A stretch of DNA of 64,000 bases from Leucoraja erinacea (lineage: Eukaryota). Shown here one piece after another: positions 24,791 through 46,358 of this stretch (positions are counted from its first letter, which is position 1; each line of letters opens with the position of its first letter). Location of the stretch: assembly GCF_028641065.1 (NCBI RefSeq), contig NC_073393.1, positions 20,026,001 to 20,090,000 on the forward strand. The letters are read 5' to 3'. The translations under genes and the position numbers were made by a program. The notes below the pieces were generated by a model. That model was not told where the DNA came from. It ran no database searches and saw only the letters and a list, made by a program, of their open reading frames with translations.

Positions 24791-27700
24791 ATGTTGTCCA
24801 GTATTGCACTTCGCTGTTTCTCTTTTTGGGGGATAATTTTCACAGGTACATGGCATCCCCATAAACCGTTTATACAGACTAAAACCTACATCTATTCAAG
24901 GTTTCTTTAATGCGTGTCTTTATTTCCATCTGCAATTAGCCCTGCTCTTGCGTTTAACCTTCTGGTGTGAAATATTCCTAATATGGCCTGTTTTTCTTTC
25001 CTTTAGGCTCTGGGGAAACTGCAGACAATGTAAGTCAATTTCCTCAAGCAGTAAATGTCTCGACGGGCCAACATGCTTCGTTTCACTGCTCTCTTCCCTT
25101 CTTTCGTGAAGGGCCCAGCGTAAGCGTACATTGGTGGAAACAGGGTGAAAATGATTTTTTCATCCCAGGCCCTGACGGGAGAACGATTTCCGGCGTCAGC
25201 ACTAAATTCAGTGGCTTCCTGAAAATAGCCAATGTGAGCCGACAGGATGCCGGAGTATATTATTGTACCATCACCCGCCGAGGCACTTTAGTTGGCAACG
25301 GAACCGGATCGACATTAGTTGTGTTGGGTAAGTATGTTTAAACATGTAACGAATGCGATTTCGCGACTGTGATATTGCCCGCAAGTAACGTGTTTTTTTC
25401 AGATTTTAATCATTCATACAGCCAGATGAATACTATAAATATTGTAATTGGTAAATCATACCATAGATGGTCTGCATGCTGATATGTATAAACAAGACGT
25501 ATTGGCGATATTAATCAAAACGTATCTTATGTATTGGATGTTTATTTCCAAAGCACAGCATAACATCTGTACAATACAGGTAGCATTGTAGTGCCCGTCG
25601 TGAATACGTAAAAGACATATGCAACTATGATAGTGGGTGACCCCATACGATATACCATTTCGCCTGCGTTAGAACAAGTGTTTGTTTATATATTGGACGT
25701 TAGAGTCATTCAATTGTTCATCCAATTTGCGGTGAACCTCACTTTGACAATGGAAGACGCCCAGGACAAAAAGATCAGTGTGGGAATGGGAGGGGGAGTT
25801 AAAGTGTTGGCTAGTGGTGGGATCCCGTTGGAGGTGGCGAAAATGCCGGAGAATAATGTGATGTATGCGACGGCTGATGGGGTGAACGGTGAGGACTAGG
25901 GGGACTATGTCCCTGTTGCGACTGGGGGAGGGGGGGTGGGGGCAAGCGCGGAGCTGCGGGTTATCGAGGAGACACCAGTGAGGGCATTGTTTATGATGGA
26001 AGGGGGAAAAACCCTGTTTCCTATTGCATGAAGGCATCTCAGATGCCCTGGTATGGAACACCTCATCTTGCGCGCCGATGCGGCGTAGACGGAGGAATTG
26101 GGAATAGGGGATACAGTCTCTACAGGACGTAGAGTGGGATATACATTTACCATCATGTTTTTCTTCACTAGACAGCACGAGTAAACGTCATCTCTGATTT
26201 CAAATCGGGTATAAAGATTCCGTTTACATTATTATAAAAGCACAATGAACGCGCGAATCCGCCTCACATTAACCATTCGCACTCCGCGCACTTATTTTCT
26301 ACTAATATAAACGTATCACTGACCTTCATTCCCTAGTTCCGCCAACTCCACTGAAAATTTACTCTGGAATTCCCGAGAAGACGGAATCCTTCTTTATTCT
26401 CTGCGCGACATCTCCCTTTTACCCAAAGGATATCAGCTTCATCTGGTATAAAGATGGTATAAAAACTACAACGGATTTAGTTAATAGCAACAAGCCCACC
26501 GCAGATGGATTGTATGAAGCTTCCAGCCGATTAAAGGTGACACAGTATGGCCCGTCCGGCACCGTTTACACCTGCCTTGTGAATCATGTAACTCGCAGTG
26601 TTCCTGCAGCAGCTACTTACGTTGTCATCAACTCCGACACAGGCAGGACAGGTAAGATCTCTATTACCATAGAAATATACGTAAAGTTTGAGATTTCACA
26701 AAATGTTGCATGATATGAATTACCGTTAGTCCGGGCCTGAAACTATCAACCATGAAGATCCGTCTATTATAATCACATCCGCTCGATTTCCATGTGGCTG
26801 CAAATGTTCTCATCAAGTACACGCAAAATTGTATTTTGACAAGTTAATTGGGAGCTGCGAATCTCAAGAAAGCTATTCCCACAAATCTCCTCGATACGGT
26901 ATAACCGCTGGTTTTCCTTTTTCTTCAGGGGGAATAGGTTGTAATTGCCCCAGTAAAGCATCCTCCGTGACCAACTGCCCTTCATTTCTGCCCAAACGAG
27001 AAGACCCCAAACTTCTCCCAACTCTTCACTGAACCAGCCACAATGATCTCATCTATCATTCTCGCAAACAACCTGTGCATAGCCCTAAATTAAAAATTAG
27101 TGATTCTCAACCATTTGTCACGGTATCCTGTCCTTTGGATCCACTGCTTCATCCATGAGGTCTAAAGTTCCACGATCTGCCTTAAATCTTTTATCAGCTT
27201 ACCAGAATTGTGTAATATTTCCTCTTTCCCGTACGCTTCCAAATTCCTCAAAATATAAGCATATCTTGGCTCATTTGTCCAGTCTAACAACGACCTTCTC
27301 ACGTCTCCTGTTTTTTTTTAAATGTAGGATAACAGCACTCCCATAACAAACACAGAAACCATTCCCCGCCACCGCGAGGGTCAATTGTTTGATTCTAATC
27401 AAAATGCCGTGATCCCGATATCCGACTAACATATCTCGCTCTGCCGCCATGTCTCCACTGCCGGATGACATCTGCTCCTTGCCGAAAGTCCAAGGAGCTG
27501 AAACGGTGTCTCCCGTTCCCTGAACATGACATTACTTCCTACAGATCAGAAATGTTGCAAATAATTTAAAGCTTCAAATAAAGTAACACGCTGAAAATAT
27601 TCTCATTGACATTCCTGAATTTTAAAGCGAATATAATTTGTGAGTCGGACAGACGGTTTGCTGTCTCCGATTTAATCAGGAGTATCTCTCATATTGAACT

Positions 27701-29326
27701 TTCATTTTAATAAGGAATAAGTGAACACCGGTTCGTTTTTTAAAGCTGTTGTTCTCGTAGTAAAGTATGAAAAACATTATTTCTCACTTATATGAATAGG
27801 TTCAGAAAATTACGCCTGAAAGCATGAGCAAGAAAGCGTTCGGCACAGTAGCCTTCATCATTCATAATATTGAGTATAGAAGTTAAGAGGTCGTGTTACA
27901 ATTGCACGGGACATTGGCGAGGCAACATTTGGAGTATTGTGTTCAGTTATGGCCATCCTGTTACAGGAATTATGTTGTTAAACTGTAAAGGGTGCAGGGA
28001 AGATTTACGAGGGAGTTACCAGGACTCGAGAGCCTGAGTTATAGGGAGCGATTGAACAGGCTCAGACTTTATTCCTTGTGCTGCAGAAGGATGAGCGGTG
28101 ATCTTATAGAAGTTCTCCGCATTAGGGGAACAGATAGGGTAAACGCACGGTATTTTTCTCAGAGGAGGGGAATAAAAAATTAGAGGGCAAAAATAAATCT
28201 GGACCAGCGCATGGAAAGGATAGTTTTAGGAGGTCATGGGCCAAACGGCAGGCAAGTGGAACTAGTGTGGATGGGCTATATTGGTCCGCGTGGGCAAGTT
28301 AGGCTGAAAGGCCTGTTTCCACATTGAATTACTCTTTGACTCCACAAATGTTGGTGGGTGAACATTTAGGGACCAGTAACTACAGTTCTATTTGCGAGAA
28401 CATAGTTTTGAATCAACACAGGGTTCGTCCACAAGGTTAAAGTCCGAAGCTGGTGCAAGGTCAACTTTGATGGTATTCGACAGGAATTTACAAACGCTTG
28501 GTGGAGGCTTGGAGCAGACGCAACCAGGATACTTATTGACCAGCAGAGTTAATCCAGCACTTTGCATCATTTTAACTTACAACGATTGAGTTGAGTAGGT
28601 TATTTGCAGCCAAAGCAGCTTTGGGGAAATGGAATGCTCTTCAAAGTGCAAAGGCGAGAGTTCTAAGCATGCATGTTCATGCTAAAGTAATAGGTAAGAC
28701 AAATGAGAGTAAAGAAGCCCAGATGACATGCAAATTTGAGTCTCTGGTCAGGAAAAAAAGGAGATATGGGCCAGTTATAGGCAGCTGGGATGAAGCGTAT
28801 CCTTGAAGGAGTTTAGGAGACTGAGGAGCATAATTAAGAAGCAAATCAAACGGGCAAAAAAAAGGCAATGGATAATTCTAGCAAATAATATTAAGGAAAA
28901 TATGAAGACATTTCGTGAGTACACTAAGAGAAACAAAAAAGGTAACTAGACAGTGATATAATGCCTGCTGTAACCTTTGACAACCTTCCTCCCAACCATC
29001 AATTTTATTAAATTTATTAAATTCAAATCTGTCAATTGTATTTGTTTGCTTTTCGCAAATGTTCAAATTATTAGTAGATTTCTGAGCTTGCAGCGTAATA
29101 CATCAGATTCAAGGGAGAGGGATTTTCCGATTTCAGGAGCTACGATATTCATATGTATCTTATGTATTTCAATCTTACAGGTATTTACACCATCAATTGT
29201 GTCAGGATAATGTGCGGTTTAGTAACGTTACTACTGCCTCTTCTCGTTGCATCATGTTGTATTGCAAGAAAAAATAAAGGTAAAGAAAATTTAACCCAAT
29301 TAAGCATTTTGTTCAGGGAGCTATAG
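24791..29326 (+). CDS. Gene B: V(J)-C1-TM(Arg) Ig-superfamily receptor, predicted activating (about 278 aa)
   Basis: Exons 24791-24845, 25007-25327, 26337-26651 and 29181-29279. Read-through gives [15 protein letters not shown] at 29326; a cryptic acceptor at 30155 would give EGRRNV*. The frame is open throughout. Mostly missed by the ORF track because the exons lack early start codons. Confidence 0.85.
25007..25327 (+). CDS. Gene B V exon
   Basis: [24 protein letters not shown]...VHWWKQGE...[37 protein letters not shown]; ctttag acceptor and G|GTAAG donor. Confidence 0.93.
25718..26140 (-). mobile_element. Penelope-like fragment in gene B intron 2
   Basis: [12 protein letters not shown]...QHFNSPSHS; longer counterpart at 48500-49305. 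Confidence 0.8.
26337..26651 (+). CDS. Gene B C1 exon
   Basis: VPPTPLKI...[21 protein letters not shown]...GLYEASSRL...YTCLVNH...SDTGRT; donor AG|GTAAG. Confidence 0.92.
27825..28345 (+). mobile_element. Degenerate CR1 3' fragment
   Basis: [21 protein letters not shown]. Confidence 0.75.
29181..29279 (+). CDS. Gene B TM exon with membrane-embedded Arg
   Basis: [33 protein letters not shown]; the acceptor atgtatttcaatcttacag is identical to the gene C TM acceptor. Confidence 0.87.
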
Positions 29327-30146
29327 CTATAGAAAGGGAAGCTCGTGATGTCTCTTTTCTTGGGCAAAATAGCTTAATTTATCTTGTCATCTCGGTCGAC
29401 AAAGCCATTGTGGGCCGAGGGGCATTTTCCTATGCTGTGTATTTATGTTTTATGTTACAATGAGTGGTCTCCCTTCCATGAAAGTATTCATATTCGCCAT
29501 TCCGCCCATTTTTAAGTATACTAATATCCTACTGTATCGTGCTGTTCCCCTCAGTACTGAAGATCAATTATGTGTCACCTGTCCAATTATGTGTCACCCA
29601 TACTTCAGGAATCAGGTTTGATTCTGGTTCGAACAATTTGCAGGACTGGAAGCAACACAACTGCGCCCATTGCTTTCTGTGAGCAGTTGAGGTTTAGTCT
29701 CTTTCCCGCAGCCAGCCACGAATCGATCTGCAAATTGTCTCTAATTACGTATGCGCAGATCTTTTTTCATGTGTCATATGTTGCCAACCTATCTGACATT
29801 CCTTTGGAAATCTAGACAGTTTACATTTGTTTTCATTGTCAAAGCCCTGCCTCTCCGTATTTGCTCTCTGCCAGGTCAAATTATATGAATCCCAGCAATC
29901 GGGAGAGAATGCTAACTGGAGATTCTATTTAATTACCAGCGGCCTGGCTCCCGAAAAACACTGACTAGAATTAAAAGGCTAACGACATCAGCATATTAAT
30001 ATCGATTCGGGATAAAGCCATGTCTTTGCATATGATCGTCTCCATCGATCTATATTAACCACCAACTCTATGAGAACCGTTTTTTTTCGGGTGACAAAAT
30101 GCCATTTTTGTAACTTGAGAATAAATTAGTATTTTTAATTTACCTG

Positions 30147-30182
30147 GTACCCAGAAGGAAGGAGAAATGTCTGATATTAATG
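30147..30182 (+). pseudogene. Gene B dead cytoplasmic exon 1
   Basis: Homolog of 52689-52732 with the acceptor CCAG changed to CCTG and 36 nt instead of 44 nt. Confidence 0.75.
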
Positions 30183-31050
30183 GTATGTACTCAAAAATGA
30201 AGCATGGTCCTAAAAATAACTGTCGGTAGTCTGGGATGCATTTAATTGCCCTTAGATTAATCTGAAGTAACATTTCACATTTACACGCCCATGGAAGAAG
30301 TAAAGTTAAAATATCTGTGTTTGCCTTCAATACAACGGAAATTAGATAGCAGTATCGTTGCTACCAATACCTCTCGGTAGCAGCCGTTGAAAGGGTCTTG
30401 TACGTTAACACGATTGCTAGATGAAAACCCATCGCCAAGATGATATATTGCACTCACTTCTAAAAATTCGTGCCTCGTGTCAACAAAATGTCTAAGGTCT
30501 GTTAAATGCTCGTACATCCAGAGCAAAAACCTGAATGCCTACCACGGATGCATATATGTGCCGTTTTTGCCTTGCACCCACTGCATGCCCAGTAATTACC
30601 ATGTGAAGACTCGAAGACAATGGTAGGACGTCCAATCAGTACAGAATCAAGCTGCCCTCTATTTGCGCACAGAAAGAAACCCCAATGCACCCGCAATCAT
30701 CTCATTGGACCTTCTCTGAACTGTGTCGTGTAACGTTCTTGCGAAGAACGGCACTATCAGGCTCTAAAATGGATCCAGACGACAGTGTTCCTTAAGCGCA
30801 TCGAAACAGACGACGTCTTTGCTACTTTGCACACTGACAACCACTTGGAAACAGAATTTTGATGTGAAATGAAATGAAAAATCGCGTACGCGATTATTTC
30901 CGTTCAAACAGTTGGCTGTAATTTGCTTATTTGCGCTTGTAAATGCTAAGATAAAGCAAAGACGTTTACGAAGATAATAAAGGTCATTTACGGCTAGGAA
31001 GCCTTCCCCCGCCATCCCCACACGGCGATTGTTTTAGCTAATCAGATCTA

Positions 31051-32664
31051 CAGTGCCCTCCATAATGTTTTGGACAAAGACCCATCACTCATTTATTTGC
31101 GTCTGTACTCCACAACTTGAGATATTTAATGGAAAAAAAATCACATGGGGTTAAAGTGCACATTGTCAGATTTAAAAAAAGGCGTTTTTATACATTTTGG
31201 TTTCACCATGTCGGAATTACAGCAGTGTTTATACATAGTTCCCTCCCCCCATTTCAGGGCACCATAATGTGTGGTGCACAGCAATGTCATGTAAATGAAA
31301 GTAGTCATGTTTAGTATTTTGTTGCATATCCTTTGCATGCAATGACTGCTTGAAGTCATCGATTCGTTGACATCGCCAGTTGCTGGGTGTCTTCTCTGTC
31401 GATGCCTTGCCAGGCCTGTATTACAGTTATCTCTAGCTTATGCTTGTTTTGGGGGCTAGTACCCATCAGTTTTCTCTTCAGCATATAAAAGGCATGCTCA
31501 ATTTGGTTCAGATCGGGTGATTGACTTGGCCACTGAAGAATTTACCATTTTTTAGCTTTGAAAAACTCCTTTGTCGCTTTAGCAATATGTTTGTGATCAT
31601 TGATTTGCTGTAGAATCAACTGCCGGCCAGTTTTGATGCATTTGTTTGAAATTTTGCAGATAGGATGTGTCTATACACTTGAGAATTCATTCTGCTCCTA
31701 CCATCAGCAGTTGTATCATCAATGAAGATAAGTGAGCCAGTACCTTCAGCAGCCATACATGCCCAAGTACTGGCTCACCGATGAGGTGGTATGCATTGGA
31801 TCTTGGGCAATTCCTTCTCTCCTCCATACTTTGCTCTTGCTATCACTCTGATATCTTAATCTTCCTCTCATCTGTCTCATCTGACCTTTTTCCAGAACTG
31901 CGGTTGCTCTTTTAAGTACTTCTTGGCAAACTGTAACCTGGCCATCCTAATTTTGCGGCTAACCAGTCGTTTGCATCTTGCAGTGCAGCCTCTGTATTTT
32001 TGTTCATGAAATCTTCCACGGAGAGAGGTCATTGACAAATCCACACCTGACTCCTGAAGAGTGTTTCTGATCTTTCGGATAGGTGGTTGGGGATTTTTCT
32101 TTATTTTGGAGAAAATTCTTCTCTCATCGGCAGTGGAGGTCTTCCATGGCCTGTATGTCCCTTTGCGATTATTACGGTCAAAAATGCACTCTTTCTTCTT
32201 AAGGATGTTCTGAACAGTTGATTTTGGTAAGCCTACGGTTTGGCTGATGTCTCTAACATTTTTATTCGTGTTTCTCAGACTCATAATGGCTTCTTTGACT
32301 TTCATTGGCACATCTTCGGTCCTCGTGTTGTTAAACAGCAATACAGGTTTCCAAATGTGATGGAAAGACTGGAGGATAGACTAGGTGCTGAGAACCCCCT
32401 TAAACACACCTGAGCAATTACAAACACCTGTGAAGCCATGTGTCCCAAACATTATGGTGCCATGAAATGGGGGGACTATGTATAAACCCAGCTGTAATTT
32501 CTACATGGTAAAACCAAGATGTATTAAATGGTCTTGAATAAAACCTGACAATATGCACTGTAACTACATGTGATTTTTTTTTCTATTACAAATCTCAAAT
32601 TGTGCAATACAGAGTCAAATAAATAAATGATGGGTCTTTCTCCCAAACATTATGGGGGGGCTCT
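31051..32664 (-). mobile_element. Tc1/mariner DNA transposon, full length, decayed
   Basis: TA|CAGTGCCCTCCATAATGTTT start; about 220-bp TIRs with internal direct repeats; HTH ORF 31877-32341; empty site in the paralog at about 54170. Confidence 0.9.
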
Positions 32665-32811
32665 ATTACTCGCTTTTTTTAGTACTGTTGGAGCAGCAGA
32701 AGTGATAGACACGTCTATTCCTGTAATGGGCCATCGAATCCATTTTAGAGCCAGATTGTGTCGTTCTCCGCAAGAATCAATTCACCTTTGTTTAGAAGAT
32801 TTCTCGTTTAG

Positions 32812-33209
32812 TCTATGGAAGCGATTGTGCCTTATTTTTAGTTTAGATTAATTTCGTTTAGTTTAGTTTAGATATATTTTGTTTAAGTTTAGTTTAGATG
32901 AGTTTAGTTTAATTTAGTTTAGTTTAGATTAGTTTAGCGATACAACGCAGAAAAAGGCCCTTCGGCCCACCGAGTCCATACCGGCCAGCGATGCCCGCAT
33001 ACTTACCATATCCTACACAAACTAGGAGCAGTTTTACAATTATAGCAAGCCAATTAACCTACAAACATGTACGTCTTACGACTGTGGGACCCGGTCTCTG
33101 GCGCCGTGTGGCAGCAACTCTTACGTTGCGCCAACGTGCCGCCCCAAATCTGCTCTAAATTTGAGCAAATCTAGGATAAATCGAATGCCGGTGAATCAAG
33201 AAAGGACAG
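32812..33209 (+). pseudogene. Gene B dead cytoplasmic exon 2 (ITIM split by SINE)
   Basis: SMEAIVPY (32812-32835), then a SINE, then SALNLSKSRINRMPVNQERT (33149-33209); the LYAQ motif is deleted relative to gene C. Confidence 0.82.
32836..33148 (-). mobile_element. SINE inserted in the gene B ITIM exon
   Basis: (TTTAG)n tail and tRNA-like head; absent from the homologous exons of gene C. Confidence 0.82.
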
Positions 33210-33843
33210 GTACTCATACATGTACGCATTCAGGCTAGACATCAGTACCTCCGCCCTTCGGCATGCTTCGGCGTTCAATAAGGTGATGATTGACCTTAGC
33301 TCTGCGTTTACCACTGCCAACCGAAGTATTGACGGCTTTACTTATTTAGTACATATTTCATCTCCTGACAGAAAATATAAAGTGGAGAAAAAAAGTCAAA
33401 TTCTTGTCCTTGCGCATAATGTATCAAATAGATTTATATGGCAAAGTTAGACACAAGATGCTGGAGAAACTCGGCGGGTCAGGCATCATCTCAGGAGAAA
33501 ATGGATGTGGCGTTTCGGGTCCGGACCCTTCTTCAGACTGCATGCAGCAGGGAGAGTAGAGGGAACATTTGAAAGCGAAGTAAATTAGGAAAAGTCGGGG
33601 CCAGCTACAGATGACCTCAGGTAAAGTGGTTTCCCGATGGGTTGACTGTTGGCCAGGGACGGGTGTGAGTCCAAGAGGGATGCATAGTTACGAACTGCCG
33701 AATTCGGTAACCAACCTTTAGTGGAGGGCGGCGAGGGGCGGGGGGAGAGGAGGGTTGGGGGGGAGGGGTGTTGCCGGCCTTGATTGGTCCTGTTTTTTCT
33801 TCACCTCAGTTCCGCCTCCCCACACAAACACGCGCGCGCGCGC

Positions 33844-33880
<37 letters not shown>

Positions 33881-34124
33881 AGACGGGTCCAGACCCCAAG
33901 AGTCACCTGCCCATTTTCGTCATATATGCTGCCTGACCCGCTGACTCACTCTAGCACTTTGTGTCTATTTTTGGTATAAACCAGTATCTGCCGTTCATTT
34001 TTATTACTTTTAGTTGGCAGCCTGTTGTAATAATTTCTGATCTTGCGATGCTCTCGTGTCTGCATGAGATTTAAAGCAACTTAAAAATTAATTAATGTTC
34101 TTCCCCCTAATTTTCATCTCGTAG

Positions 34125-34290
34125 ACCAAGCAGAAACCGACGCATGCTAAAGTGATCTACGCTCCGCTCGTTACGGCAGGAAACAAGAAAAGAGAGCAAA
34201 CAATTGTACGGATAATGCCACTGACAACTAACAGCCAATAAAGCAAATGCGAGGTGCTGATGTAATCTATTCAGAATGGAATCCCGAGTA
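34125..34290 (+). pseudogene. Gene B orphan terminal ITIM exon (VIYAPL)
   Basis: TKQKPTHAKVIYAPLVTAG..., homologous to 58951-59118 but frameshifted. The ancestral frame carries an in-frame TAA before DVIYSEWNPE*. Confidence 0.75.
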
Positions 34291-35879
34291 GTGTCCGTGC
34301 TCAAAGTGATGTCTTGTTATTTGTGTAATTACTTATCAGCTCGTCCATTCTCTGACAAAAAGCTGCAACAACCCTCAGAGAAAGGACGAGATTACTATAT
34401 TACAAGCATGAAGCACTGATTTTACGTCAAAACTCCTAACCAACTGAGCCCTTCACCTTCAACACTTGGGGTGATATGGGTTGCAAATGATTGACAAAGT
34501 TATGTTCAAGTAAGTTTCGGTATCCATGCGTTTAGCAACTGTGCTCCCTGTCTTTGCATATCTTTTGTAAAGGTAGGCACCTAAATTATAATTTCTGTAA
34601 AATAATATGCACTCCCAAACGTGCTTTTACCGCATTCTTTCCAGTCGCTTTGCAATTGCTGAATGTTTGAAGATTAAAAACAAACATGATCAGAAATGGA
34701 AACGCTGTACATCATATGAATAAAAATCGAAACGATCAGAGACGAAACCAATCCGTCTTGACTCGGTTGGGGAAAAATAAACATGTAGTGGGAAGCCTTT
34801 TGTTGCATGCTATCAGTCAAAGAAAAGACTATACATGAGTACTATCAAGCCGTCCACCGTGTACCATTAAAGGATAATAGCCTTCAAATATCATTCAATG
34901 GGAAGGGCTGGAGCTTTGGGATTGCGAAATCTATAATATTGTAAGGGTCGGTGTTCAGAAGGACGAGGGGTGACCTTATAGAGGTGAACACGATCATGAG
35001 TGGAATGTGGTACTTTTACCCGGAGATGGGGAATGGACAAGCAAAAGAGGTCGGTATAAAGTGAGTGTGGACATTTTTAATTAGAACCTGCGGAGCATCT
35101 TTTTTACACAAAGGGTATGCGGTGTGTGGAACGAGTAGCCAGAGGTGTTAGTTGAAGCAGATACTGTAACAATGTTTACAAAACCTTTAGAAAGGTGCAT
35201 GGATATGATAGGTTTAGATGGTTAAGGACCCATGCAAGTGGGCCGAGTGTAGATGCGGCACGTTGGTCGGCGCGGGCAAGTTGTGATAAAGGGCTTGTTT
35301 ATAGGCGATGTGGCTCTATGATTCTCAATAAGTCTAACCGCAGGAAATGCAACACCTGTCCTTATACCTCCACCCTCGCCTCCATTCAGGGACCCCGGCA
35401 CTCCTTCCAGGTGAGACAGAATTTCACGTGCACCGCCACCAAACTTATGTACTATATCCGCCCTTCCCGATGTGGCCTCATGTACATCCACTGGGCTGAA
35501 TGTCGTCTCTGCAACCATTTCGCTCCTAACACTTGACATAAGTGCTTTAAGGGTGTAGGGAAGAACTACAGATATTGATTTACCCAGAATATATGCTCAA
35601 AATGCTGGAGTAACTCAGCGGGACAGACAGCATTTCTGGAGAGAAGGAATGGGTGACGTTTTGGGTCGAGGCCCTTCATTAGACTGAGAGTCAGGCGACA
35701 GGAATTCTAGAGATATGGAAGAATATGGTGTGAAAACGACAGATGTGGATAAGGAATTGTAGAATGATAACGCCCTCTGCGCAAAGCGGAGAGGGGTGAA
35801 GATGGGAAGATATGGCTAGTGGTAGGAACCCGTTGGAGGTGGCGAAAATGTCGGAGAAACGTGTGCTGTATGCGAGGGC

Positions 35880-37642: not shown

Positions 37643-40118
37643 TATGCACTTTAACTACATGTGATTTTTTTTTCTATTACAAATCTCAAATTGTGCAATA
37701 CAGAGTCAAATAAATAAATGATGGGTCTTTGTCCCAAACATTATGGGGGGCTCTATTACTCGCTTTTTTAGTACTGTTGGAGCAGCAGAAGTGATAGATA
37801 CTTCTATTCCTGTAATGGGCCATCGAATCCATTTTAGAGCCAGATTGTGTCGTTCTCCGCAAGAATCAATTCACCTTTGTTTAGAAGTTTTGTCGTTTAG
37901 TCTATGGAAGCGATTGTGCCTTATTTTTAGGTTACACAGAAAAGCTGGAGAAACTCAGCGGGTGCAACAGCATCTATGGAGCGAAGGAAATAGGCAACGT
38001 TTCGGGCCGAAACCCTTCTTCAGACTGATCAGGGGTGGGGGGGGGTGGGGACAAGAAAGGGAAAAGGAGGAGTAGCCGGAAGGCTGGAGGGTGGGAGGAG
38101 ACAGCAGGGGAGCTGAGGAAGGGGAGGAGACAGCAAGGACTAACAGAATTGGGAGAAGTCGATGTTCATGCCCCCGGGGTGCAGACTCCCCAAACGGAAT
38201 ATGAGGTGCTGTTCCTCCAATTTCCGGTGCTGCTCGCTGTGGCCATGGAGGAGACCCAGGACAGAGAGGTCGGAGACGGAGTGGGAGGGGGAGTTGAAGT
38301 GCTGAGCCACCGGGAGGTCAGCTAGGTTATTGCGGACCGAGCGGAGGTGTTCGGCGAAACGATCGCCCAACCTCCGCTTGGTCTCACCGATATAGATCTG
38401 CTGACATCTAGAGCAGCGGACGCAATAGATGAGGTTGGAAGAGATGCAGGTAAACCTCTGTCGCACCTGGAACGATTGCTTGGGTCCCTGAAAGGAGTTG
38501 AGGGGGGAGGTAAAGGGACAAGTGTTGCATCTGCTGCGGCCGCAAGGGAAAGTGCCCGGGGAGGGGGTGGACCGAGAGGGAAGGGAAGAATTGACAAGGG
38601 AGTTATGGAGGGAGCGGTCTTTGCGGAAGGCAGATATGGGGGGAGATGGGAAGATGTGGCCAGTAGTGGGGTCACGTTGGAGGTGGCGAAACTGACGGAG
38701 GATTATTTTTTGTATGTGATGGCTGGTGGGGTGAAAGGTGAGGACTAGGGGGACTCGGCCCTTGTTGCGAGTGCGGGGATGGGGAGAGAGAGCAGTGTTG
38801 CGGGGTATGGAAGAGACCCTGGTGCGAGCCTCATTTATGGTGGAGGAGGGGAACCCCCGTTCCCTGAATAGTGAGGACATTTCAGATGTCCTGGTGTGGA
38901 ACGCCTCATCCGTGGAGCAGATACGGCGTAGACGGAGGAATGGGGAGTAGGGGATGGAGTCCTTACAGGAAGCAGGGTGGGAAGAAGTGTAGTCCAGATA
39001 GCCATGGGAGTCAGTGGGTTTATAGTGTATGTCGGTTAGAAGTCTATCACCTGCAATGGAGATAGTGAGGTCAAGGAATGGTAGGGAAGTGTCGGAGAAG
39101 TGCCTTATTTTTAGTTTAGTTTAATTTCGTTTAGTTTAGTTTAGATATATTTTGTTTAAGTTTAGTTTAGATGAGTTTAGTTTAATTTAGTTTAGTTTAG
39201 TTTAGATTAGTTTAGCGATACAACGCAGAAAAAGGCCCTTCGGCCCACCGAGTCCATGCCGGCCATCGATGCCCGCATACTTACCATATCCTACACAAAC
39301 TAGGAGCAGTTTTACAATTATAGCAAGCCAATTAACCTACAAACCTGTACGTCTTACGACTGTGGGACCCGGTCTCTGGCGCCGTGTGGCAGCAACTCTT
39401 ACGTTGCGCCAACGTGCCGCCCCAAATCTGCTCTAAATTTGAGCAAATCTAGGATAAATCGAATGCCGGTGAATCAAGAAAGGACAGGTACTCATACATG
39501 TACGCATTCAGGCTAGACATCAGTACCTCCGCCCTTCGGCATGCTTCGGCGTTCAATAAGGTGATGATTGACCTTAGCTCTGCGTTTACCACTGCCAACC
39601 GAAGTATTGACGGCTTTACTTATTTAGTACATATTTCATCTCCTGACAGAAAATATAAAGTGGAGAAAAAAAGTCAAATTCTTGTCCTTGCGCATAATGT
39701 ATCAAATAGATTTATATGGCAAAGTTAGACACAAGATGCTGGAGAAACTCGGCGGGTCAGGCATCATCTCAGGAGAAAATGGATGTGACGTTTCGGGTCC
39801 GGACCCTTCTTCAGACTGAATGCAGCAGGGAGAGTAGAGGGAACATTTGAAAGCGAAGTAAATTAGGAAAAGTCGGGGCCAGCTACAGATGACCTCAGGT
39901 AAAGTGGTTTCCCGATGGGCTGACTGTTGGCCAGGGACGGGAGTCCAAGAGGGATGCATAGTTACGAACTGCCGAATTCGGTAACCAACCTTTAGTGGAG
40001 GGCCGGGAGGGGCGGGGGGGAGAGGAGGGTTGGGGGGGGGGGGTGTTGCCGGCCTTGATTGGTCCTGTTTTTTCTTCACCTCAGTTCCGCCTCCCCACAC
40101 AAACACGCGCGCGCGCGC

Positions 40119-40163
<45 letters not shown>

Positions 40164-40510
40164 AGACGGGTCCAGACCCCAAGAGTCACCTGCCCATTTT
40201 CGTCAGATATGCTGCCTGACCCGCTGACTCACTCTAGCACTTGGTGTCTATTTTTGGTATAAACCAGTATCTGCCGTTCATTTTTATTACTTTTAGTTGG
40301 CAGCCTGTTGTAATAATTTCTGATCTTGCGATGCTCTCGTGTCTGCATGAGATTTAAAGCAACTTAAAAATGAATTAATGTTCTTCCCCCTAATTTTCAT
40401 CTCGTAGACCAAGCAGAAACCGACGCATGCTAAAGTGATCTACGCTCCGCTCGTCACGGCAGGAAACAAGAAAAGAGAGCAAACAATTGTACGGATAATG
40501 CCACTGACAA
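37643..40510 (+). repeat. Local duplicate of 32552-34228 (Tc1 end plus dead tail exons) carrying a Penelope insertion
   Basis: Near-identical sequence (ORFs 33220-33450 and 39498-39728 are identical); flanked by a 63-bp direct repeat at 37580-37642 and 40510-40572. Confidence 0.85.
37931..39099 (-). mobile_element. Young Penelope-like element, 5'-truncated, with 15-bp TSD
   Basis: Intact 246-aa ORF with a Cys motif and GIY-YIG (LIYCVRC...IYIGETKRRL..RF.EH); TSD GTGCCTTATTTTTAG at 37916-37930 and 39100-39114. Confidence 0.9.
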
Positions 40511-41689
40511 CCCGTAGTTCGGATCGAACCGGTGTCTGCTGCATTTGCTGTAAGGCAGCAACTCCACCGCTTCGCCACCATGCCGCCATGTTGTAACTGG
40601 AGAGAGGGTCAGCAGGAGTACAGCTGCTGTGATACTGGGGAGACCCGGGTGAGGGCCTCATCTGTGATGGATGACGAGAATCCCCATTTCCTAAAGAATA
40701 AGGACATCGGGATGTCCTGGTTTGGCACACGTCATCTTGGGCGCAGATGCAGCGTAGACGTTGGAATTCGGAACAGGGGACTAGGACGCAGTGTGGGAAT
40801 AAGTATGATCTAAATAGCTGTGAGTTTATGATATATGTCAATCGATATTCTGTTTCCTGTGTTGGAGCCAGTGAGATAAAGAAACAGAAGGGAGATGTCG
40901 GGGATGGTCCTAGTGAACTTGAGTGCGGGATGAAACTTAGTCGTGATGTTAATGGAGTCTGTGAGTTGTGCATGGGAGCCCCAATGCAATCATCAGTGTA
41001 ATATAGATAGATTTCTGGGATAAGCCCAGTGTACGCCTTGAACAGGGATTATTTGACCTTCCCCGCAAAGATAGACATAAAAAGTTGGAGTAACACATGG
41101 ACACGCACCTTCTCGATTGTGTTACTTATTGTAGCTGCAGTACTTGTATTTGGGTCAGTTGAGTTTATACTGAATGGTAGAGCCCAGCGTATTGATAATG
41201 GCGTCACAGGGGGGGGGGGGGGGGGGGGGGGGCATTGTCTTCATTGGAGGAAAGAAGATGAGACTTTATTGCCTTCCTTCACAGTGAGGAATGTGGTGGA
41301 GCCGCTGTGGTGGATGTTTATGTTAATTTTTATGTATTTGTGTCTTGTTGCTTTTTTTGGTATGACTGTATGGCAAATCAAATTTTCTGTATGTTGAAAA
41401 ACACGTTTAGCTAATAAATTACATGAGTTACGAGTTACGAGTTATTAGCTTCCTACTGTGTTCTCTATAAATATCTGATCAAGCCTGGGGGATTTGTCTA
41501 CCTTCACACAACTTAGGACGTTCAGTACTTCATCGACCGCAATGCCGACTTACCTCAAGATCCTTCCATTAACTGTCCCAGATTCTGAGATGCCACCGTC
41601 TTTTTCCATAGTAAAGCCTCAGTTTCGCTCATTATCTGAACTTCCTCACACTCAGGTGCCTTGCCTTTCATTCTAACATGAATGTGTCT

Positions 41690-42520: not shown

Positions 42521-44676
42521 GTCCTTCCTCACTCCCTACTGTAATCCTTTCTATTATGTCCTCTGACCTTATTTCATCTCCATGCATACGGCTTCCAGCC
42601 TCTCATCTGTCTCAGTCTTCCTTCGGATCCCCCACCCTTCCAATCTAAATTAAACCCTTTAAGGGATTCCTGTTTCTCCTTAAAATTATACCTAATTTCT
42701 GCATTATGTTCGGAGCAGATATCCTTGGCCAAAAGGTCCGTGCCTATGCTATACTGTCCTTTGTACTTCTCAAAGACCTTGCTAAAGTCCATTTAGACGA
42801 CGTCTATGGCCCTGGCACCAGCAATCTTCTTTGCTGCTTCTTCAAAATACTCTGGTAAATTCGTCTCTCATGTACAAAGCCATGCTTACTATATCCACTG
42901 TACGGATACCATTCCAAAAGCAGATGTATCTCATCCCTCCACTTAACTCGGATTCATTTGTTCACTGTTCTCCATTCTGATTCGACGAATCAAACGCGAA
43001 TCCACATTGGTATTTCCCCATATATACCTGTGTGTGCTTACGTGTGTCCAGTCATCTCTTTGTTAATTTGAGCAGTCAGGTGCGGGATTAACAACAATAG
43101 ACAATAGATAATAGGTGCAGGAGTAGGCCATTTGGCCCTTCGAGCCAGTACCGCCATTCAATGTGATCATGGCTGATCATCCACAATCATTAGCCCGTTC
43201 CTGCCTTCTCTCCATATCCCCTGACTCCGAAGAGAGGTTAGTCTACGTGGTAGTCTGGGGTACGTCCGCAACTCTCTGTAATATCTAGCTGTCTTGGGAG
43301 TAGCTGTTCCCAAACCATGCCTTGATGCGGCCCGATAAAATGTTTTCAATGGCGCATCTTTTGAGGCAGGGATATTGACGACATGCGTAACTGCCCAAGC
43401 CTTCTAAGAGAGTAGAGGTATTGGTGTGCTTTATTTGCCATTGTATCGACGTGGCTGGTCTAGGACAAATTGTTGGTGATATGTATTCCTAAAAACCTGG
43501 AGCTTTCAGCCATCTTTACTTTAGCAGCATCAATGTATACCAGTGTATGTGCACCGCTTCGCTTGCCGACGACGATCATAACTTCTTTGTCTTGCTTTCA
43601 TTAAGAGAACGGTTATGTCATGATATAAGGAAACGTCTCTGTCCAGAGTCCCTTAGTCTTTGTAATATATGGATTTCCATGGATTATTGGGATTCAGGCA
43701 TTGATTGACAACCAGCACACACGGATGTGACAATATTATAGTATAAACCCTCTAATTCAGGTCAGTACTTTCAACTACTTTAGGCATTTACTGATCCAGG
43801 TCATTACTTCCAACTGTGGCACCCGCCTTGCATATACAGTAGCTTGTAGCACCGTGTACGTAAAGCAGGACTGCGCCTCTTTGCTTTCTGATTGCATTCC
43901 ATCTGGATATCTGTGGAGTCTCCAGTTACCTTCAGGTTTCGCGTCCACAGGAAGTAAAGCAGTTCAGACTACAATGGCCAAAGGACTTATGCAAGTACAT
44001 TGGAGCATCTAGGAAGATAGAAAAATAACTAACAGTGAGGTACGGATTTCCCTGCATCCCAGCAAACTTTGCCAGGCTATTTTTATATAACCACAACTCA
44101 TACAATTAGCGATTCTTCACAGAGAATTCACCATACTCACATATAGAACAAGGTTTTAGAAACCGGTAATTGTTGTCAGTATATTGCTCAAACGAGTATC
44201 TTACTAATATTATATTATAAATAGTCACAATCATGCAGTTTATTCCGCTGTTTTCCTAATCCTGCCGTATTTGGAGCAATTGGATTGCTTATGTGAACTG
44301 ATAACCTGATAATAATTAATCGCTGAACGCCTTTATTAGCAATCAAACAGCTTTGCGCAAACTATAGAAACAGGTGTCCGCACAACCCTTGTGAATTCTT
44401 CATTGACGTTGACATAGTTTAACCTGTCTACACGCACTACCCCCTCCGCTTGCATCCACTCCCCGACACTAAACTACACTAACCGTGCCTGCATCACTGC
44501 CTGGACAATCACATTATGAAGTATTGAGTCTGGCTTGATTTCCTCCATGTTCAGCAATGTTTGGCACGTATTTCGGCATTTCCATCAGTATATGTGTTAC
44601 GGCGGCGAACGCTATTTCTGCTTGGAAAACCTACAATAGTCGGTCCAAATCCCACCATCTGGACAACAAATCACAC

Positions 44677-46358
44677 AGAAACACAGAAACATAGAAAATA
44701 GGTGCAGGAGTAGGCCATTCGGCCCTTCAAGCATTAACGCCATTCAATATGATCATGGTTGATCATCCAACTCGGTATCCTGTACCTGCCTTCTGTCCAT
44801 ACCCCCTGATCCCTTTAGCCGCAAGGGCCACATCTAACTCCCTCTTAATTACAGCAAATGAACTGGCCAGAACTATCTTCTGTGGCAGAGAATTCCAGAG
44901 ATTCACCACTTTCTGTGTGAAAAATATTTTTCTCATCTCGGTCCTAAACGATTTCCCCCTTATCCATGAACTGTGACCCCTTGTTCTGGATTTCCTCAAC
45001 ATCGGGAACAATCTTCCTGCATCTAGCCTGTCAACCCCTTAAGAGTTGTGTAAGTTTCTATAAGATCCCCCCTCAATCTTCTAAATTCTAGCAAGTACAA
45101 GCCGAGTCTATCCAGTCTTTCTTCATATGAAAGTCCTGACATCCCAGGAATCAGTCTGGTGAACCTTCTCTGTACTCCCTCTATGGCAAGAATGTCTTTC
45201 CTCAGATTAGGAGACCAAAACCGTACGCAATACTCCAGGTGTGGTCTCACCAAGACCCTGAACAACGGCAGTAGAACCTACCTGCTCCTATACTCAAATC
45301 CTTTTGCTATGAATGCTAACATACCATTGGCTTTCTTCACTGCCTGCTGCACCTGCATGCCTACTTTCAATGACTGGTGTACCATGACACCCAGGTCTCG
45401 TTGCATCTCCCCCTTTCCTAATCGGCCACCATTCAGATAATAGTCTACTTTCCTGTTTTTGCCACCAAAGTGGATATCCTCACATTTATCCACATTATAC
45501 TGCATCTGCCATGCATTTGCCCACTCACCCAGCCTATCCAAGTCACCTTGCAGCCTCCTTGCATCCTCCTCACAGCTAACACTGCCCCCCAACTTCGTGT
45601 CATCCGCAAACTTTGAGATGTTGCATACAATTCCCTCGTCCAAACCATTAATATATATAATATAAATAGCTGTGGTCCCAGCACTGAGCCTTGCGGTACC
45701 CCACTAGTCACTGCCTGTCATTCTGAAAAGGACCCGTTTACTCCTACTCTTTGCTTCCTGTCTGCCAGCCAGTTCTCTATCCATAAACACTGAACCCCCA
45801 ATACCGTGTGCATTAAGTTTGTATACTAATCTCTTATGTGGGACCCTGTCGAAAGCCTTCAGAATGTCCAGATATAACACATCCACTGATTCTCCCTTAT
45901 CCACTCTACTAGTTACATCCTCGAACATTTCTATAAGATTCGTCAGACATGATTTACCTTTCATAAATTCATGCTGACTTTGTCCAATGATTTCACCACT
46001 TTCCATATGTGCTGCTATCCCATCTTTAATAACTGACTGTAGCAGTTCCCCCACTACCGATGTTAGACTAACTGGATTGTAATCCCCGTGTTCTCTCTCC
46101 CTCCCTTTTTAAAAAGTGGGGTTACATTAGCTACCCTCCAATCCTCAGGAACTACTCCAGAATCTAAAGAATTTTGAAAAATTATCACTCATGCACCCAC
46201 TATTTCTGGGGCTACTTCGTTAAGTACTCTGGGATGCAGCCTATCTGGCCCTGGTGATTTATCGGCCTTTAATCCATTCAATTTACCTAACACCACTTCC
46301 CGGCTAACCTGGATTTTACTCACATCATCCATCTAATTTGACCCCCGGTCCCCTGCTA
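44677..46358 (-). mobile_element. CR1 LINE, 5'-truncated
   Basis: FADDTKLG and GVPQGSVLGP motifs plus tail repeats. Confidence 0.92.

What the first reader, a model, noticed from the sequence alone, without database searches (positions are those of the whole stretch)
30140..34290. Fossil record of an inhibitory-to-activating conversion: all three tail exons of gene B are disabled, with a SINE inside the ITIM
Seen by comparison with gene C: the cyt1 acceptor AG became TG with an 8-nt loss. Cyt2 has a SINE inserted right after the ITIM Tyr codon (IVPY^SAL) and an 11-nt deletion removing the second Tyr (TLYAQ). Cyt3 keeps VIYAPL but is out of phase, frameshifted and carries a stop. A Tc1 sits in the intervening intron. 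The ectodomain and TM exons remain intact. Inference: gene B descends from an ITIM receptor, as proposed for activating KIR and Ly49.
Basis: partly seen in the sequence, partly recalled or inferred. Interest (0 to 1): 0.78.

Follow-up and report, generated by a model that had tools for sequence, protein, structure and literature searches.

The report
Decayed inhibitory tail, skate SIRP-like gene
A little-skate immune-receptor gene still carries the broken remains of the three exons that once encoded its inhibitory signalling tail, a clear but not unprecedented record of an inhibitory receptor turned into a short-tailed one.

Summary
Downstream of gene B's membrane-anchor exon lie recognisable copies of all three cytoplasmic exons of neighbouring gene C, 72-82% identical. 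A Tc1-like element sits between cyt1 and cyt2.

Intact tails in gene A, and in ray and shark relatives, show the long tyrosine tail is ancestral. Gene B therefore descends from an ITIM receptor.

Three corrections:
- Gene B is already annotated by NCBI (XP_055505064.1, "SIRP-alpha-like"). That model splices the membrane exon onto the cyt3 relic in a shifted frame (8 codons, stop). So cyt3 may still serve as the last exon, with its ITIM codons in the 3' UTR.
- The proper comparator is gene C's second tail copy. The first copy is a younger, C-specific insertion.
- "Activating" is unproven. Four RNA runs gave no read on any B-specific exon, and there was no positive control.

The scan had already noted similar fossil tails elsewhere in this genome (unchecked notes). 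I class this as a new member of a known kind.

The parts
24791..24845 (+). Gene B leader exon ([18 protein letters not shown], phase 1 donor)
   Evidence: scan. It is 100% identical to C 47329-47383 and resembles the leaders of family proteins (P0154, 11 of 18 identical).
25007..25327 (+). Gene B V-set exon with J-like [10 protein letters not shown] end
   Evidence: Pfam V-set E 1e-10. 100% match to P0002 residues 67-173.
26337..26651 (+). Gene B C1-set exon. Its donor lies 9 nt downstream of the C-type donor, which reads GC in B.
   Evidence: Pfam C1-set E 7e-12.
29181..29279 (+). Gene B transmembrane exon ([32 protein letters not shown]). The Arg codon AGG is at 29204-29206.
30147..30182 (+). 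cyt1 relic: acceptor TG (30145-30146) instead of AG, and 8 nt shorter than C
31051..32660 (-). Tc1-like transposon in the cyt1-cyt2 relic interval, absent from C
   Evidence: Inverted ends 31056-31280 and 32659-32439, 81% alike. HTH_Tnp_Tc3_2 domain.
32812..32835 (+). cyt2 relic, 5' part (SMEAIVPY, ending on the ITIM Tyr codon 32833-32835). The acceptor ag is kept.
32836..33149 (-). SINE-like insert in antisense orientation, (TTTAG)n-type tail first. Edges are known to within a few bases.
   Evidence: Absent from both C copies. Family copy at 12949-13235. Reads from other copies. No tRNA head found and no target-site duplication found.
33150..33209 (+). cyt2 relic, 3' part (ALNLSKSRINRMPVNQERT). 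An 11-nt deletion removes TLYAQ. The donor gt at 33210 is kept.
34125..34291 (+). cyt3 relic. The acceptor is intact. The NCBI model reads 34125-34150 in a shifted frame (DQAETDAC, stop TAA at 34148-34150). VIYAPL codons are at 34152-34169. There is a 1-nt deletion after 34201, a TAA at 34229-34231, and the old stop at 34289-34291.
34292..34870 (+). Ancestral 3' UTR, 82% identical to C's up to 34582. AATAAA/ATTAAA signals at 34673, 34719, 34776 and 34866.
37643..40511 (+). 97% duplicate of B 32552-34228 (Tc1 end, cyt2 relic with insert and 11-nt deletion, first 104 nt of cyt3 with the 1-nt deletion). It is split by an extra 1.16-kb repeat at 37935-39099.

Best explanation
Gene B is a little-skate member of the elasmobranch SIRP-like V-C1 receptor family. 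It began with a long cytoplasmic tail of three exons carrying tyrosine motifs, as neighbouring genes A and C and its shark and ray relatives still have, and it has lost that tail.

The three tail exons survive in place as relics. cyt1 can no longer be spliced in. cyt2 is split by a SINE-like insert and has lost its second tyrosine. cyt3 is frameshifted and carries a stop.

From the membrane exon (phase 1 donor at 29279) every possible continuation ends within 6 to 15 codons without a tyrosine motif:
- Read-through gives [15 protein letters not shown], then stop.
- An internal AG in cyt1 gives EGRRNV, then stop.
- cyt2 gives VYGSDCALFLV, then stop.
- cyt3 gives DQAETDAC, then stop.

The most likely mature form, inferred and not shown, is the one NCBI predicts. 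In it the membrane exon is joined straight to the cyt3 relic, so the old last exon still supplies the stop, the 3' UTR and the poly(A) signals, and its ITIM codons lie untranslated just behind the stop.

One base change, the acceptor AG to TG, would have been enough to start this. Skipping cyt1 puts an intact C-type cyt2 out of frame with a stop after six codons. The other lesions could then accumulate neutrally.

The product would be a V-C1 receptor with a 13-residue tail and an arginine at the outer edge of its membrane span. That is the layout of receptors that signal through a partner chain. Its outer part is kept about 98% identical to that of ITIM-bearing gene C.

The confidence given is for the descent-and-relic part. 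That the gene is expressed and works as an activating receptor I put at about 0.45.
For: Homology and lesions.

Polarity:
- Both C copies lack every B lesion.
- Gene A in the same window has an intact cyt2 with both tyrosines (15865-15981) and a cyt3 (16086-16172).
- Of the 38 family-like proteins scanned, 18 have one or more ITIM-like motifs by my pattern. Their tails align exon for exon with C's.

Orthology of the relics with C's ancestral copy: B's TM-cyt1 intron is collinear with the sequence upstream of C's second copy. C's first copy starts abruptly at about 52533.

Neutral decay: the relic exons are 72-80% identical to C, no better than the flanking introns and UTR at 79-82%.

Annotated product: P0002 = XP_055505064.1 matches the V, C1 and TM exons 100% and ends KNKDQAETDAC. 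That equals 29279 joined to 34125.

Terminal exon: no AATAAA or ATTAAA occurs in the 520 nt after the TM exon, while four lie 380-575 nt after the cyt3 relic.

Upstream exons: all are open with canonical borders. V exon differences from C are 4 synonymous to 1 non-synonymous.

Age of the lesions: those lying inside the 97% duplicate are shared with it, so they are older than that duplication, and they are seen twice in the assembly.

Arginine: the Arg codon AGG aligns with C's ATG, one base change.
Against: - Expression: none was seen. Four RNA runs of the same species label (about 5-25% of each read) gave zero depth on the TM exon, on all three relics outside repeats, and on the 3' UTR. Tissues are unknown and no positive-control gene was laid, so this neither shows silence nor supports the model.
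- The NCBI model: it starts in odd exons just behind gene A's tail (16371-16415, and 17356 to about 17556) and skips the canonical leader. It was probably built without RNA support, so its last splice may be an ab initio guess.
- Recent homogenisation: the ectodomain is only 2% diverged from C, so its intactness says little about long-term constraint.
- C1 exon: all 6 differences from C are non-synonymous. This fits relaxed constraint as well as positive selection.
- The arginine: it lies directly before the best hydrophobic 19-mer, so it may simply flank the membrane.
Confidence: 0.75

Rival explanations
1. Gene B is a dead gene as a whole. The tail relics are part of the general decay of an unexpressed copy. 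Its ectodomain looks intact only because gene conversion from C refreshed it recently.
For: - Zero reads on B-specific exons in four RNA runs.
- The NCBI model lacks the canonical leader.
- B and C are 95-98% identical from 21817 to 27265, introns included, so the open exons are young.
- C1 exon differences are 0 synonymous to 6 non-synonymous.
Against: - The TM exon lies outside the homogenised block (78% identical to C). It is still open, hydrophobic and correctly bordered, while all three tail exons of the same age each carry two or more lesions.
- The loss of the C-type C1 donor is made good by an in-frame donor 9 nt downstream.
- V exon differences are 4 synonymous to 1 non-synonymous.
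- The RNA runs had no positive control and their tissue is unknown.
Confidence: 0.3
2. The locus is a recombinant. A membrane exon of an older arginine-bearing family member was placed in front of the tail of an inhibitory gene. The relics would then belong to another gene's history and would not record an in-place conversion.
For: - Identity to C breaks sharply at 27265/50452, from 90-97% to about 71%. This shows recombination or conversion has shaped the locus.
- Other short-tailed members with a basic residue at the start of the membrane span exist in rays and sharks (P0006, P0032, P0084).
Against: - The TM exon and its flanks are collinear with C's (29156-29340 with 51365-51548). The 3' two thirds of the exon align without gaps.
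- The Arg codon differs from C's Met codon by one base.
- The intron from the TM exon to cyt1 is collinear with C's ancestral intron.
Confidence: 0.1
3. The lesions are assembly or haplotype artefacts and gene B really has an intact tail.
For: The window has two N gaps. It also has a 97% duplicate of the relic region that could be a misplaced haplotype.
Against: - There are six independent lesions of different kinds.
- Those within the duplicate's range (the insert, the 11-nt deletion, the 1-nt deletion) are present in both copies.
- Unlabelled public runs hold 21-46% of the stretch's sampled words.
Confidence: 0.03

Closest known systems
Rhesus macaque Mm-KIR3DH
   Same: An activating receptor made from an ITIM-tailed signalling module. 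A cytoplasmic exon (exon 8) is not expressed, which shifts the frame and removes both ITIMs. The ectodomain comes from inhibitory relatives. (PMC2213150, passages seen.)
   Different: - A different family (KIR, Ig C2-type domains) in a mammal.
- There the skipped exon and the activating function are shown by cDNA and function. Here two exons are skipped, they are physically broken, and expression is not shown.
Hominoid short-tailed KIR (KIR2DS/3DS)
   Same: They derive from an inhibitory KIR by a few changes: a basic residue in the membrane span, plus a stop within the membrane-proximal ITIM. (PMC2213150, passages seen.)
   Different: - In KIR the tail is cut by a stop inside one continuous coding region.
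- Here it is cut by splice-site loss and exon skipping, and transposable elements have since landed in the relics.
- The KIR partner (DAP12) is known. The partner here is unknown.
Mammalian SIRP-alpha / SIRP-beta pair (recalled from general knowledge, not from a call)
   Same: - A V plus C1-set ectodomain.
- A four-tyrosine inhibitory tail in one member.
- A near-identical ectodomain with a basic membrane residue and a very short tail in the other.
- NCBI names gene B after SIRP-alpha.
   Different: - The skate proteins have one C1 domain, not two.
- Orthology to mammalian SIRP was not tested.
- The skate arginine lies at the outer edge of the span, unlike the mid-membrane lysine recalled for SIRP-beta.
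Other fossil inhibitory tails noted by this scan in the same genome (s1-877756, s1-876312)
   Same: They are described as skate SIRP-like genes with a decayed ITIM/ITSM tail behind the stop codon, one of them also split by a retro-insert.
   Different: - They lie on other pieces of the genome.
- A different first lesion is reported: a stop replacing the ITIM tyrosine.
- These are unchecked notes, and I did not examine those loci.

Membership tests
Elasmobranch SIRP-like V-C1 receptors (NCBI: 'tyrosine-protein phosphatase non-receptor type substrate 1-like') | N-terminal V-set domain ending in a J-like G-x-G-T-x-L-x-V strand, encoded in one unrearranged exon | tested here: met
   Pfam V-set E 1e-10. 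[10 protein letters not shown] is seen in the translation.
Elasmobranch SIRP-like V-C1 receptors (NCBI: 'tyrosine-protein phosphatase non-receptor type substrate 1-like') | One C1-set domain followed by a single membrane span | tested here: met
   Pfam C1-set E 7e-12. Hydrophobic 19-mer [19 protein letters not shown].
Elasmobranch SIRP-like V-C1 receptors (NCBI: 'tyrosine-protein phosphatase non-receptor type substrate 1-like') | Significant full-length similarity to named members in other sharks and rays | tested here: met
   The C1 exon gave 151 representatives at E 1e-10 or better. P0002 gave 19 proteins at E 1e-10 or better, from Amblyraja, Mobula, Heterodontus, Hemitrygon, Scyliorhinus, Heptranchias and others.
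Elasmobranch SIRP-like V-C1 receptors (NCBI: 'tyrosine-protein phosphatase non-receptor type substrate 1-like') | Three-exon cytoplasmic tail with tyrosine motifs | tested here: not met
   It is present only as broken relics. The feature is met in genes A and C and in many relatives. Gene B is therefore a tail-less derivative within the family.
Paired activating receptor (KIR2DS / SIRP-beta / LILRA type) | Ectodomain nearly identical to a neighbouring inhibitory member | tested here: met
   The V exon is 98.5% and the C1 exon 98.0% identical to gene C. C's exon path to an ITIM tail is open in the DNA.
Paired activating receptor (KIR2DS / SIRP-beta / LILRA type) | Short cytoplasmic tail without an inhibitory motif | tested here: met
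   All four continuations from the TM exon stop within 6-15 codons and have no I/V/L/S-x-Y-x-x-L/V motif.
Paired activating receptor (KIR2DS / SIRP-beta / LILRA type) | Basic residue inside the membrane span | tested here: inconclusive
   The Arg (29204-29206) lies immediately before the best hydrophobic 19-mer, with a moderately hydrophobic IYTINCV in front of it. It aligns with a Met inside C's hydrophobic run.
Paired activating receptor (KIR2DS / SIRP-beta / LILRA type) | Association with an ITAM-bearing adaptor, and activating output | not testable with these tools
   This needs co-expression and signalling assays.
Paired activating receptor (KIR2DS / SIRP-beta / LILRA type) | The gene is expressed | tested here: inconclusive
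   Zero reads on B-specific exons in 4 of 4 RNA runs laid. Tissue is unknown and there was no positive control.
Whole-gene pseudogene | Disabling lesions in exons that the product needs | tested here: not met
   The leader, V, C1 and TM exons are open, with canonical splice borders.
UrIg / UrIg2 (non-rearranging VJ genes of sharks) | One VJ domain followed by many C domains | tested here: not met
   Passages of PMC12227049 describe one VJ and 9-11 C domains. Gene B has one C1 domain.

The most novel reading that the evidence does not exclude
The skate SIRP-like cluster would hold a long-lived paired receptor. Its outer parts are kept alike by repeated gene conversion (about 2% divergence), while the signalling ends have been apart far longer (about 20-28% divergence).

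The tail-less partner would have arisen by a single splice-acceptor mutation and then reused the old ITIM exon, out of frame, as its last exon.

Together with the other fossil tails this scan noted in the same genome, that would mean inhibitory-to-activating switches were already being made repeatedly, and by different molecular routes, in cartilaginous fish. The arginine (N-x-x-R at the top of the span) would couple to an FcR-gamma-like chain.
Probability: 0.3. Interest if true: 0.6.

Novelty: new member of a known kind. Interest (0 to 1): 0.42.

Why it matters
Paired inhibitory and activating receptors are thought to arise when pathogens exploit an inhibitory receptor and the host answers with a look-alike that activates. 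The direction of that switch has mostly been inferred from trees of mammalian KIR and Ly49 genes.

Here the direction can be read straight from the DNA of a cartilaginous fish. The discarded inhibitory exons are still in place, each broken in a different way. A plausible first step, one splice-site base, can be named.

This gives a simple, testable example at the base of the jawed vertebrates, in a family that databases predict. None of my seven answered literature searches turned up a description of it.

It is not a new principle. The gene is already annotated, and similar fossils were noted elsewhere in this genome.

Tried and rejected
Expression. One sequencing-run run listed no RNA holder. 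One read-laying run used 4 of the 12 raw-read RNA runs listed (X7, X10, X11, X14) over 29000-34900. Reads fell only on the Tc1-like element, the SINE-like insert and other repeats, mostly 95-99% alike and with loose ends at the element borders, so they come from other copies. Nothing can be concluded about gene B.

I therefore could not test which lesions are shared with Amblyraja or other skates, or whether the arginine or the tail loss came first.

Gene C's annotated product. Two searches found no little-skate protein with C's ectodomain or tail: P0002 whole (175-558 aa) and the tail region of P0001 (271-862 aa). Shorter, longer or unannotated products are not excluded.

UrIg. I considered it because of the VJ-C1 look and rejected it: it has many C domains.

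SINE head. ARAGORN found no tRNA-like gene in 32700-33300. A 19-nt head string matched only itself and the duplicate. No target-site duplication was found.

An idea I dropped: that B once also had C's first tail copy and lost it by deletion. B 29631-29705 aligns with C 54956-55027 at 60 of 77. But B 29622-29645 matches the end of C's left intron part about as well, by eye (about 17 of 21). C's first copy also begins abruptly at about 52533, while B and C's second copy stay alike further upstream. The local alignment of B 29300-29660 against C 51500-52540 scored 48, within the shuffle range (mean 43, maximum 73). So the left part of the intron is not demonstrably alignable, and this point stays an inference.

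Supplementary files of papers were closed and I did not ask for them. The supplements of PMC2213150 or PMC12227049 could hold gene lists that bear on prior description.

No joined, spliced model of gene B or C was given to any tool or script. Exons were translated and searched one by one, and the joined step was left out.

Full report
WHAT THE WINDOW HOLDS

Three genes on the + strand each have a V-set exon and a C1-set exon:
- Gene A: V about 5560-5880, C1 about 8080-8400.
- Gene B: V 25007-25327, C1 26337-26651.
- Gene C: V about 47545-47865, C1 about 49502-49807.

The C1 exon of B, searched against 1.84 billion representatives, found a 319-aa protein that is 100% identical over the exon (P0002). 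Its source record is XP_055505064.1, 'tyrosine-protein phosphatase non-receptor type substrate 1-like [Leucoraja erinacea]'. The genome is therefore little skate, and gene B is already a predicted gene named after SIRP-alpha.

P0002 as a query gave 19 proteins at E 1e-10 or better from skates, rays and sharks. They carry assorted automatic names: SIRP-alpha-like, tapasin-related, lambda light chain-like and others.

CHECKING THE OBSERVATION

Gene C's tail is encoded by three exons after the TM exon (51390-51494):
- cyt1, 52689-52732, [14 protein letters not shown].
- cyt2, 54347-54454, [36 protein letters not shown].
- cyt3, 58951-59118, TKQKPMPGKVIYAPV...GIYSEWIPK, then stop.

Behind B's TM exon (29181-29279) lie recognisable copies of all three, in the same order and orientation. 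The introns between them are collinear at 73-82% identity.

cyt1 relic, 30147-30182. It is preceded by cctg where both C copies have ccag. It is 36 nt against 44, with the last 8 nt before the donor missing.

cyt2 relic. It starts at 32812 behind an intact acceptor and reads SMEAIVPY. After the TAT codon (32833-32835) comes a repeat of about 313 nt that both C copies lack. Homology then resumes at 33150: ALNLSKSRINRMPVNQERT. The 11 nt gctgtatgcac that encode the second tyrosine are gone, and the donor ag|gt remains. The 5' part also lacks 12 nt, in frame.

cyt3 relic, 34125-34291. It keeps its acceptor and reads TKQKPTHAKVIYAPL in the old frame. There is a 1-nt deletion after 34201, and a TAA at 34229-34231 where C has TCA. 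The tail end, DVIYSEWNPE then stop, is still legible in the shifted frame, with the stop at the same place as in C.

Transposon. A Tc1-like element (about 31051-32660) lies between the cyt1 and cyt2 relics. It has inverted ends 81% alike and a Tc3-type transposase HTH domain at E 1e-13. It is absent from C, where the flanks are 72 bp apart.

The insert in cyt2 is short and non-coding. It starts on the + strand with a (TTTAG)n-like run. It has a relative at 12949-13235 that is about 88 nt longer inside, and it attracts RNA reads from other copies. I call it SINE-like. No tRNA-like head and no target-site duplication were found.

IS THE UPSTREAM PART OF B INTACT?

Yes.
- A leader exon (24791-24845, [18 protein letters not shown]) with a phase-1 donor lies 161 nt before the V exon. 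It is 100% identical to C's.
- The V, C1 and TM exons are open, have AG/GT borders, and their phases fit.
- One detail: the donor that C uses after the C1 exon reads GC in B. B has a GT donor 9 nt further on, which adds three in-frame codons (GRT). The NCBI protein contains them.

WHICH STATE IS ANCESTRAL?

The lesions are missing from both tail copies of C.

Gene A, in the same window and only about 57% identical to B in V and C1 at the DNA level, has an intact cyt2 with both tyrosines (15865-15981...CSYAALDLSKSKMISNMKGTEERTTYAE) and a cyt3 (16086-16172...KLIYASEEL...).

Relatives in Mobula (P0152), Heptranchias (P0155, P0159), Heterodontus (P0151, P0154), Amblyraja (P0001) and others carry tails that match C's exon for exon...PYAALD...ERTVYAQ | TKQR...LTYA...EYAQL...VIYxE.

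Of the 38 family-like proteins picked by a simple pattern:
- 18 have at least one ITIM-like motif by my pattern.
- 10 have no clear membrane span in the model.
- 10 have a membrane span but no motif. Several of these, and also P0084 (one motif in a 15-residue tail), have a basic residue at the start of the span (P0002, P0006, P0032, P0084).

The long tyrosine tail is therefore the old state, and B's condition is derived.

WHICH COPY OF C IS THE RIGHT COMPARATOR?

C's tail region is itself duplicated. 52533-54972 (cyt1a, cyt2a, the first 61 nt of a cyt3a) matches 55680-59023 (cyt1b, cyt2b, cyt3b) at 87-93%.
- The second cyt2 has a 1-nt deletion that shifts the frame.
- The first cyt3 lacks 12 nt, including the tyrosine, and then runs into unrelated sequence.

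B's intron between the TM exon and cyt1 (29656-30146) is collinear with the sequence upstream of C's second copy (54977-55793, then a repeat, then 56569 onward). C's first copy starts abruptly at about 52533, while B and the second copy stay alike further upstream.

B's relics are thus the counterparts of C's second set, which is the ancestral one. The first copy is a later insertion in C's lineage.

The outcome is the same with either copy.

No lesion is shared between B's relics and C's second set, so the set was intact when the two tails parted.

WHAT CAN GENE B STILL MAKE?

The TM exon ends in phase 1. Four continuations are conceivable:
- Reading on through the donor gives [15 protein letters not shown], then stop (29324-29326).
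- An AG inside the cyt1 relic gives EGRRNV, then stop.
- The cyt2 acceptor gives VYGSDCALFLV, with the stop inside the insert.
- The cyt3 acceptor gives DQAETDAC, with a TAA stop at 34148-34150.

None has a tyrosine motif, and no combination of relic lengths brings VIYAPL into frame without meeting a stop.

The NCBI protein ends ...CIARKNKDQAETDAC. That is exactly 29279 joined to 34125.

In that model the old last exon is still the last exon. Its ITIM codons (34152-34169) sit two bases behind the stop, and the old 3' UTR (82% identical to C's) follows, with AATAAA/ATTAAA signals at 34673-34866. There is no such signal in the 520 nt after the TM exon.

I take this as the likeliest mature form, with a caveat. 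The same model begins in two odd exons (16371-16415, and 17356 to about 17556) just behind gene A's tail, and it skips the canonical leader. The Amblyraja model P0001 also lacks a leader. These look like models built without RNA support, so the last splice may be a program's guess.

HOW IT PROBABLY HAPPENED (INFERENCE)

Losing the cyt1 acceptor alone is enough. With cyt1 skipped, an intact C-type cyt2 is entered one frame off and stops after six codons (read from C's cyt2a: frame f1, '[14 protein letters not shown]...', is not that frame; the relevant reading G|TC CAT GCA ACG TGC GGG TGA is by eye).

After that, nothing protects the tail exons. They are in fact no better conserved against C (72-80%) than the introns and UTR beside them (79-82%).

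The 97% duplicate at 37643-40511 carries the Tc1 end, the insert, the 11-nt deletion and the 1-nt deletion. So those events are older than that duplication.

The arginine codon AGG (29204-29206) aligns with ATG (Met) in C's NYVMIS, one base apart. B also lacks four codons further on, and it has SC where C has KR at the inner end. This moves the hydrophobic stretch inward and leaves the arginine at its outer edge.

Which came first, arginine or tail loss, cannot be told from one genome.

THE PAIR

From 21817 to 27265, B is 90-97% identical to C (42693-50452), introns included. Beyond that point identity drops to about 71%. The TM exon is 78% identical and the tail 72-82%. The outer parts have therefore been homogenised recently, while the signalling ends are old.

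Differences between B and C are 4 synonymous to 1 non-synonymous in the V exon, and 0 to 6 in the C1 exon. Against the Amblyraja protein, three of the six C1 changes are on B's side and three on C's (by eye). B is therefore not decaying faster than C there.

EXPRESSION

The single reads call laid four RNA runs of the same species label on 29000-34900. Depth was zero in every bin that holds B-specific sequence. Only the Tc1-like element, the insert and other repeats were covered, by reads mostly 95-99% alike whose ends hang loose at the element borders.

About 5-25% of each run was read. The tissues are unknown and no control gene was laid. This neither shows that B is silent nor supports any transcript model. 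I put it at about 0.3.

COMPARISON WITH WHAT IS KNOWN

Passages of Abi-Rached and Parham 2005 (PMC2213150) describe the same kind of switch:
- Hominoid short-tailed KIR arose from an inhibitory KIR by a membrane lysine plus a stop within the first ITIM.

The second case is the nearest parallel to B's skipped exons and out-of-frame last exon.

The SIRP-alpha/SIRP-beta pair is the nearest by domain make-up; this is recalled, not from a call. UrIg/UrIg2 of sharks is a different thing, one VJ domain and many C domains (passages of PMC12227049).

None of seven answered literature searches turned up a description of this skate or shark family or of its fossil tails. The library lacks most subscription journals, and supplements were closed.

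EARLIER NOTES OF THIS SCAN

Unchecked AI notes report the same gene's arginine (s1-878684) and the B/C homogenisation (s1-878694). They also report, on other pieces of this genome, two more fossil inhibitory tails in SIRP-like genes (s1-877756, s1-876312), and paired clusters (s1-878523, s1-877452).

The scan has therefore found this kind of thing before on other DNA. I did not examine those loci.

VERDICT

- The core inference, that B descends from an ITIM-tailed receptor, is well supported.
- 'All three exons disabled' needs the rider that cyt3 is probably reused out of frame.
- 'Activating' and even 'expressed' are unproven.
- It is a clean new example of a known evolutionary route, in an already predicted gene, so the interest is moderate.

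Noticed in passing
window 37643-37934 and 39100-40511: A 97% duplicate of B's relic region (32552-34228). It runs from inside the Tc1 right end to 104 nt into cyt3. It is split by a 1.16-kb repeat whose flanks repeat about 19 nt (32827-32845), and it is bounded on both sides by SINE-like fragments. It could be a real segmental duplication or a misplaced haplotype.
   Followed up: partly
window 52533-54972 versus 55680-59023: Gene C's tail block is duplicated with complementary damage. The second cyt2 (58465-58571) has a 1-nt frameshift. The first cyt3 (from 54912) lacks the VIYAP tyrosine and is truncated. A full four-tyrosine tail therefore needs cyt1a and cyt2a from one copy and cyt3b from the other. 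The Amblyraja model P0001 instead ends in the cyt3a-type exon.
   Followed up: partly
window 54966-54977 and 52515-52522: The right edge of C's first tail copy and the end of the intron part in front of it both read ...ATCGGCA. This short shared string at the junction suggests a microhomology-mediated insertion.
   Followed up: no
window 29656-29689 versus 54977-55010: A 34-nt island is 97% identical between B's TM-cyt1 intron and C, in a region otherwise about 75% alike. In the Amblyraja model the matching stretch is coding ([14 protein letters not shown]).
   Followed up: no
window 26642-26653 versus 49807-49812: The C1 exon donor has moved. C splices at ACAG|GTAAGA. B has GC there and uses a GT 9 nt downstream, adding Gly-Arg-Thr before the membrane exon.
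   Followed up: yes
window 26480-26599 (C1 exon): All six B/C differences in the C1 exon change the amino acid, while four of five in the V exon are silent. This is an odd contrast for a membrane-proximal domain.
   Followed up: partly
window 16371-16415 and 17356-17556: The NCBI model of gene B starts in two exons directly behind gene A's tail exons (15865-16172) and skips B's own leader. This could be a chimeric or ab initio 5' end, or read-through from gene A.
   Followed up: no
window 27265/27269 versus 50452/50520: B/C identity breaks sharply from 90-97% to about 71%, some 615 nt after the C1 exon. This is the edge of a conversion or duplication tract.
   Followed up: partly
window 33442-33533 and 33880-33973: Inverted repeats (about 75% alike) flank a (CA)n run in the cyt2-cyt3 relic intron, and C has the same element at about 54480-54800. 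In Amblyraja's model P0001, part of this element is included as a coding exon (SLADSQPTREPAYL...).
   Followed up: no
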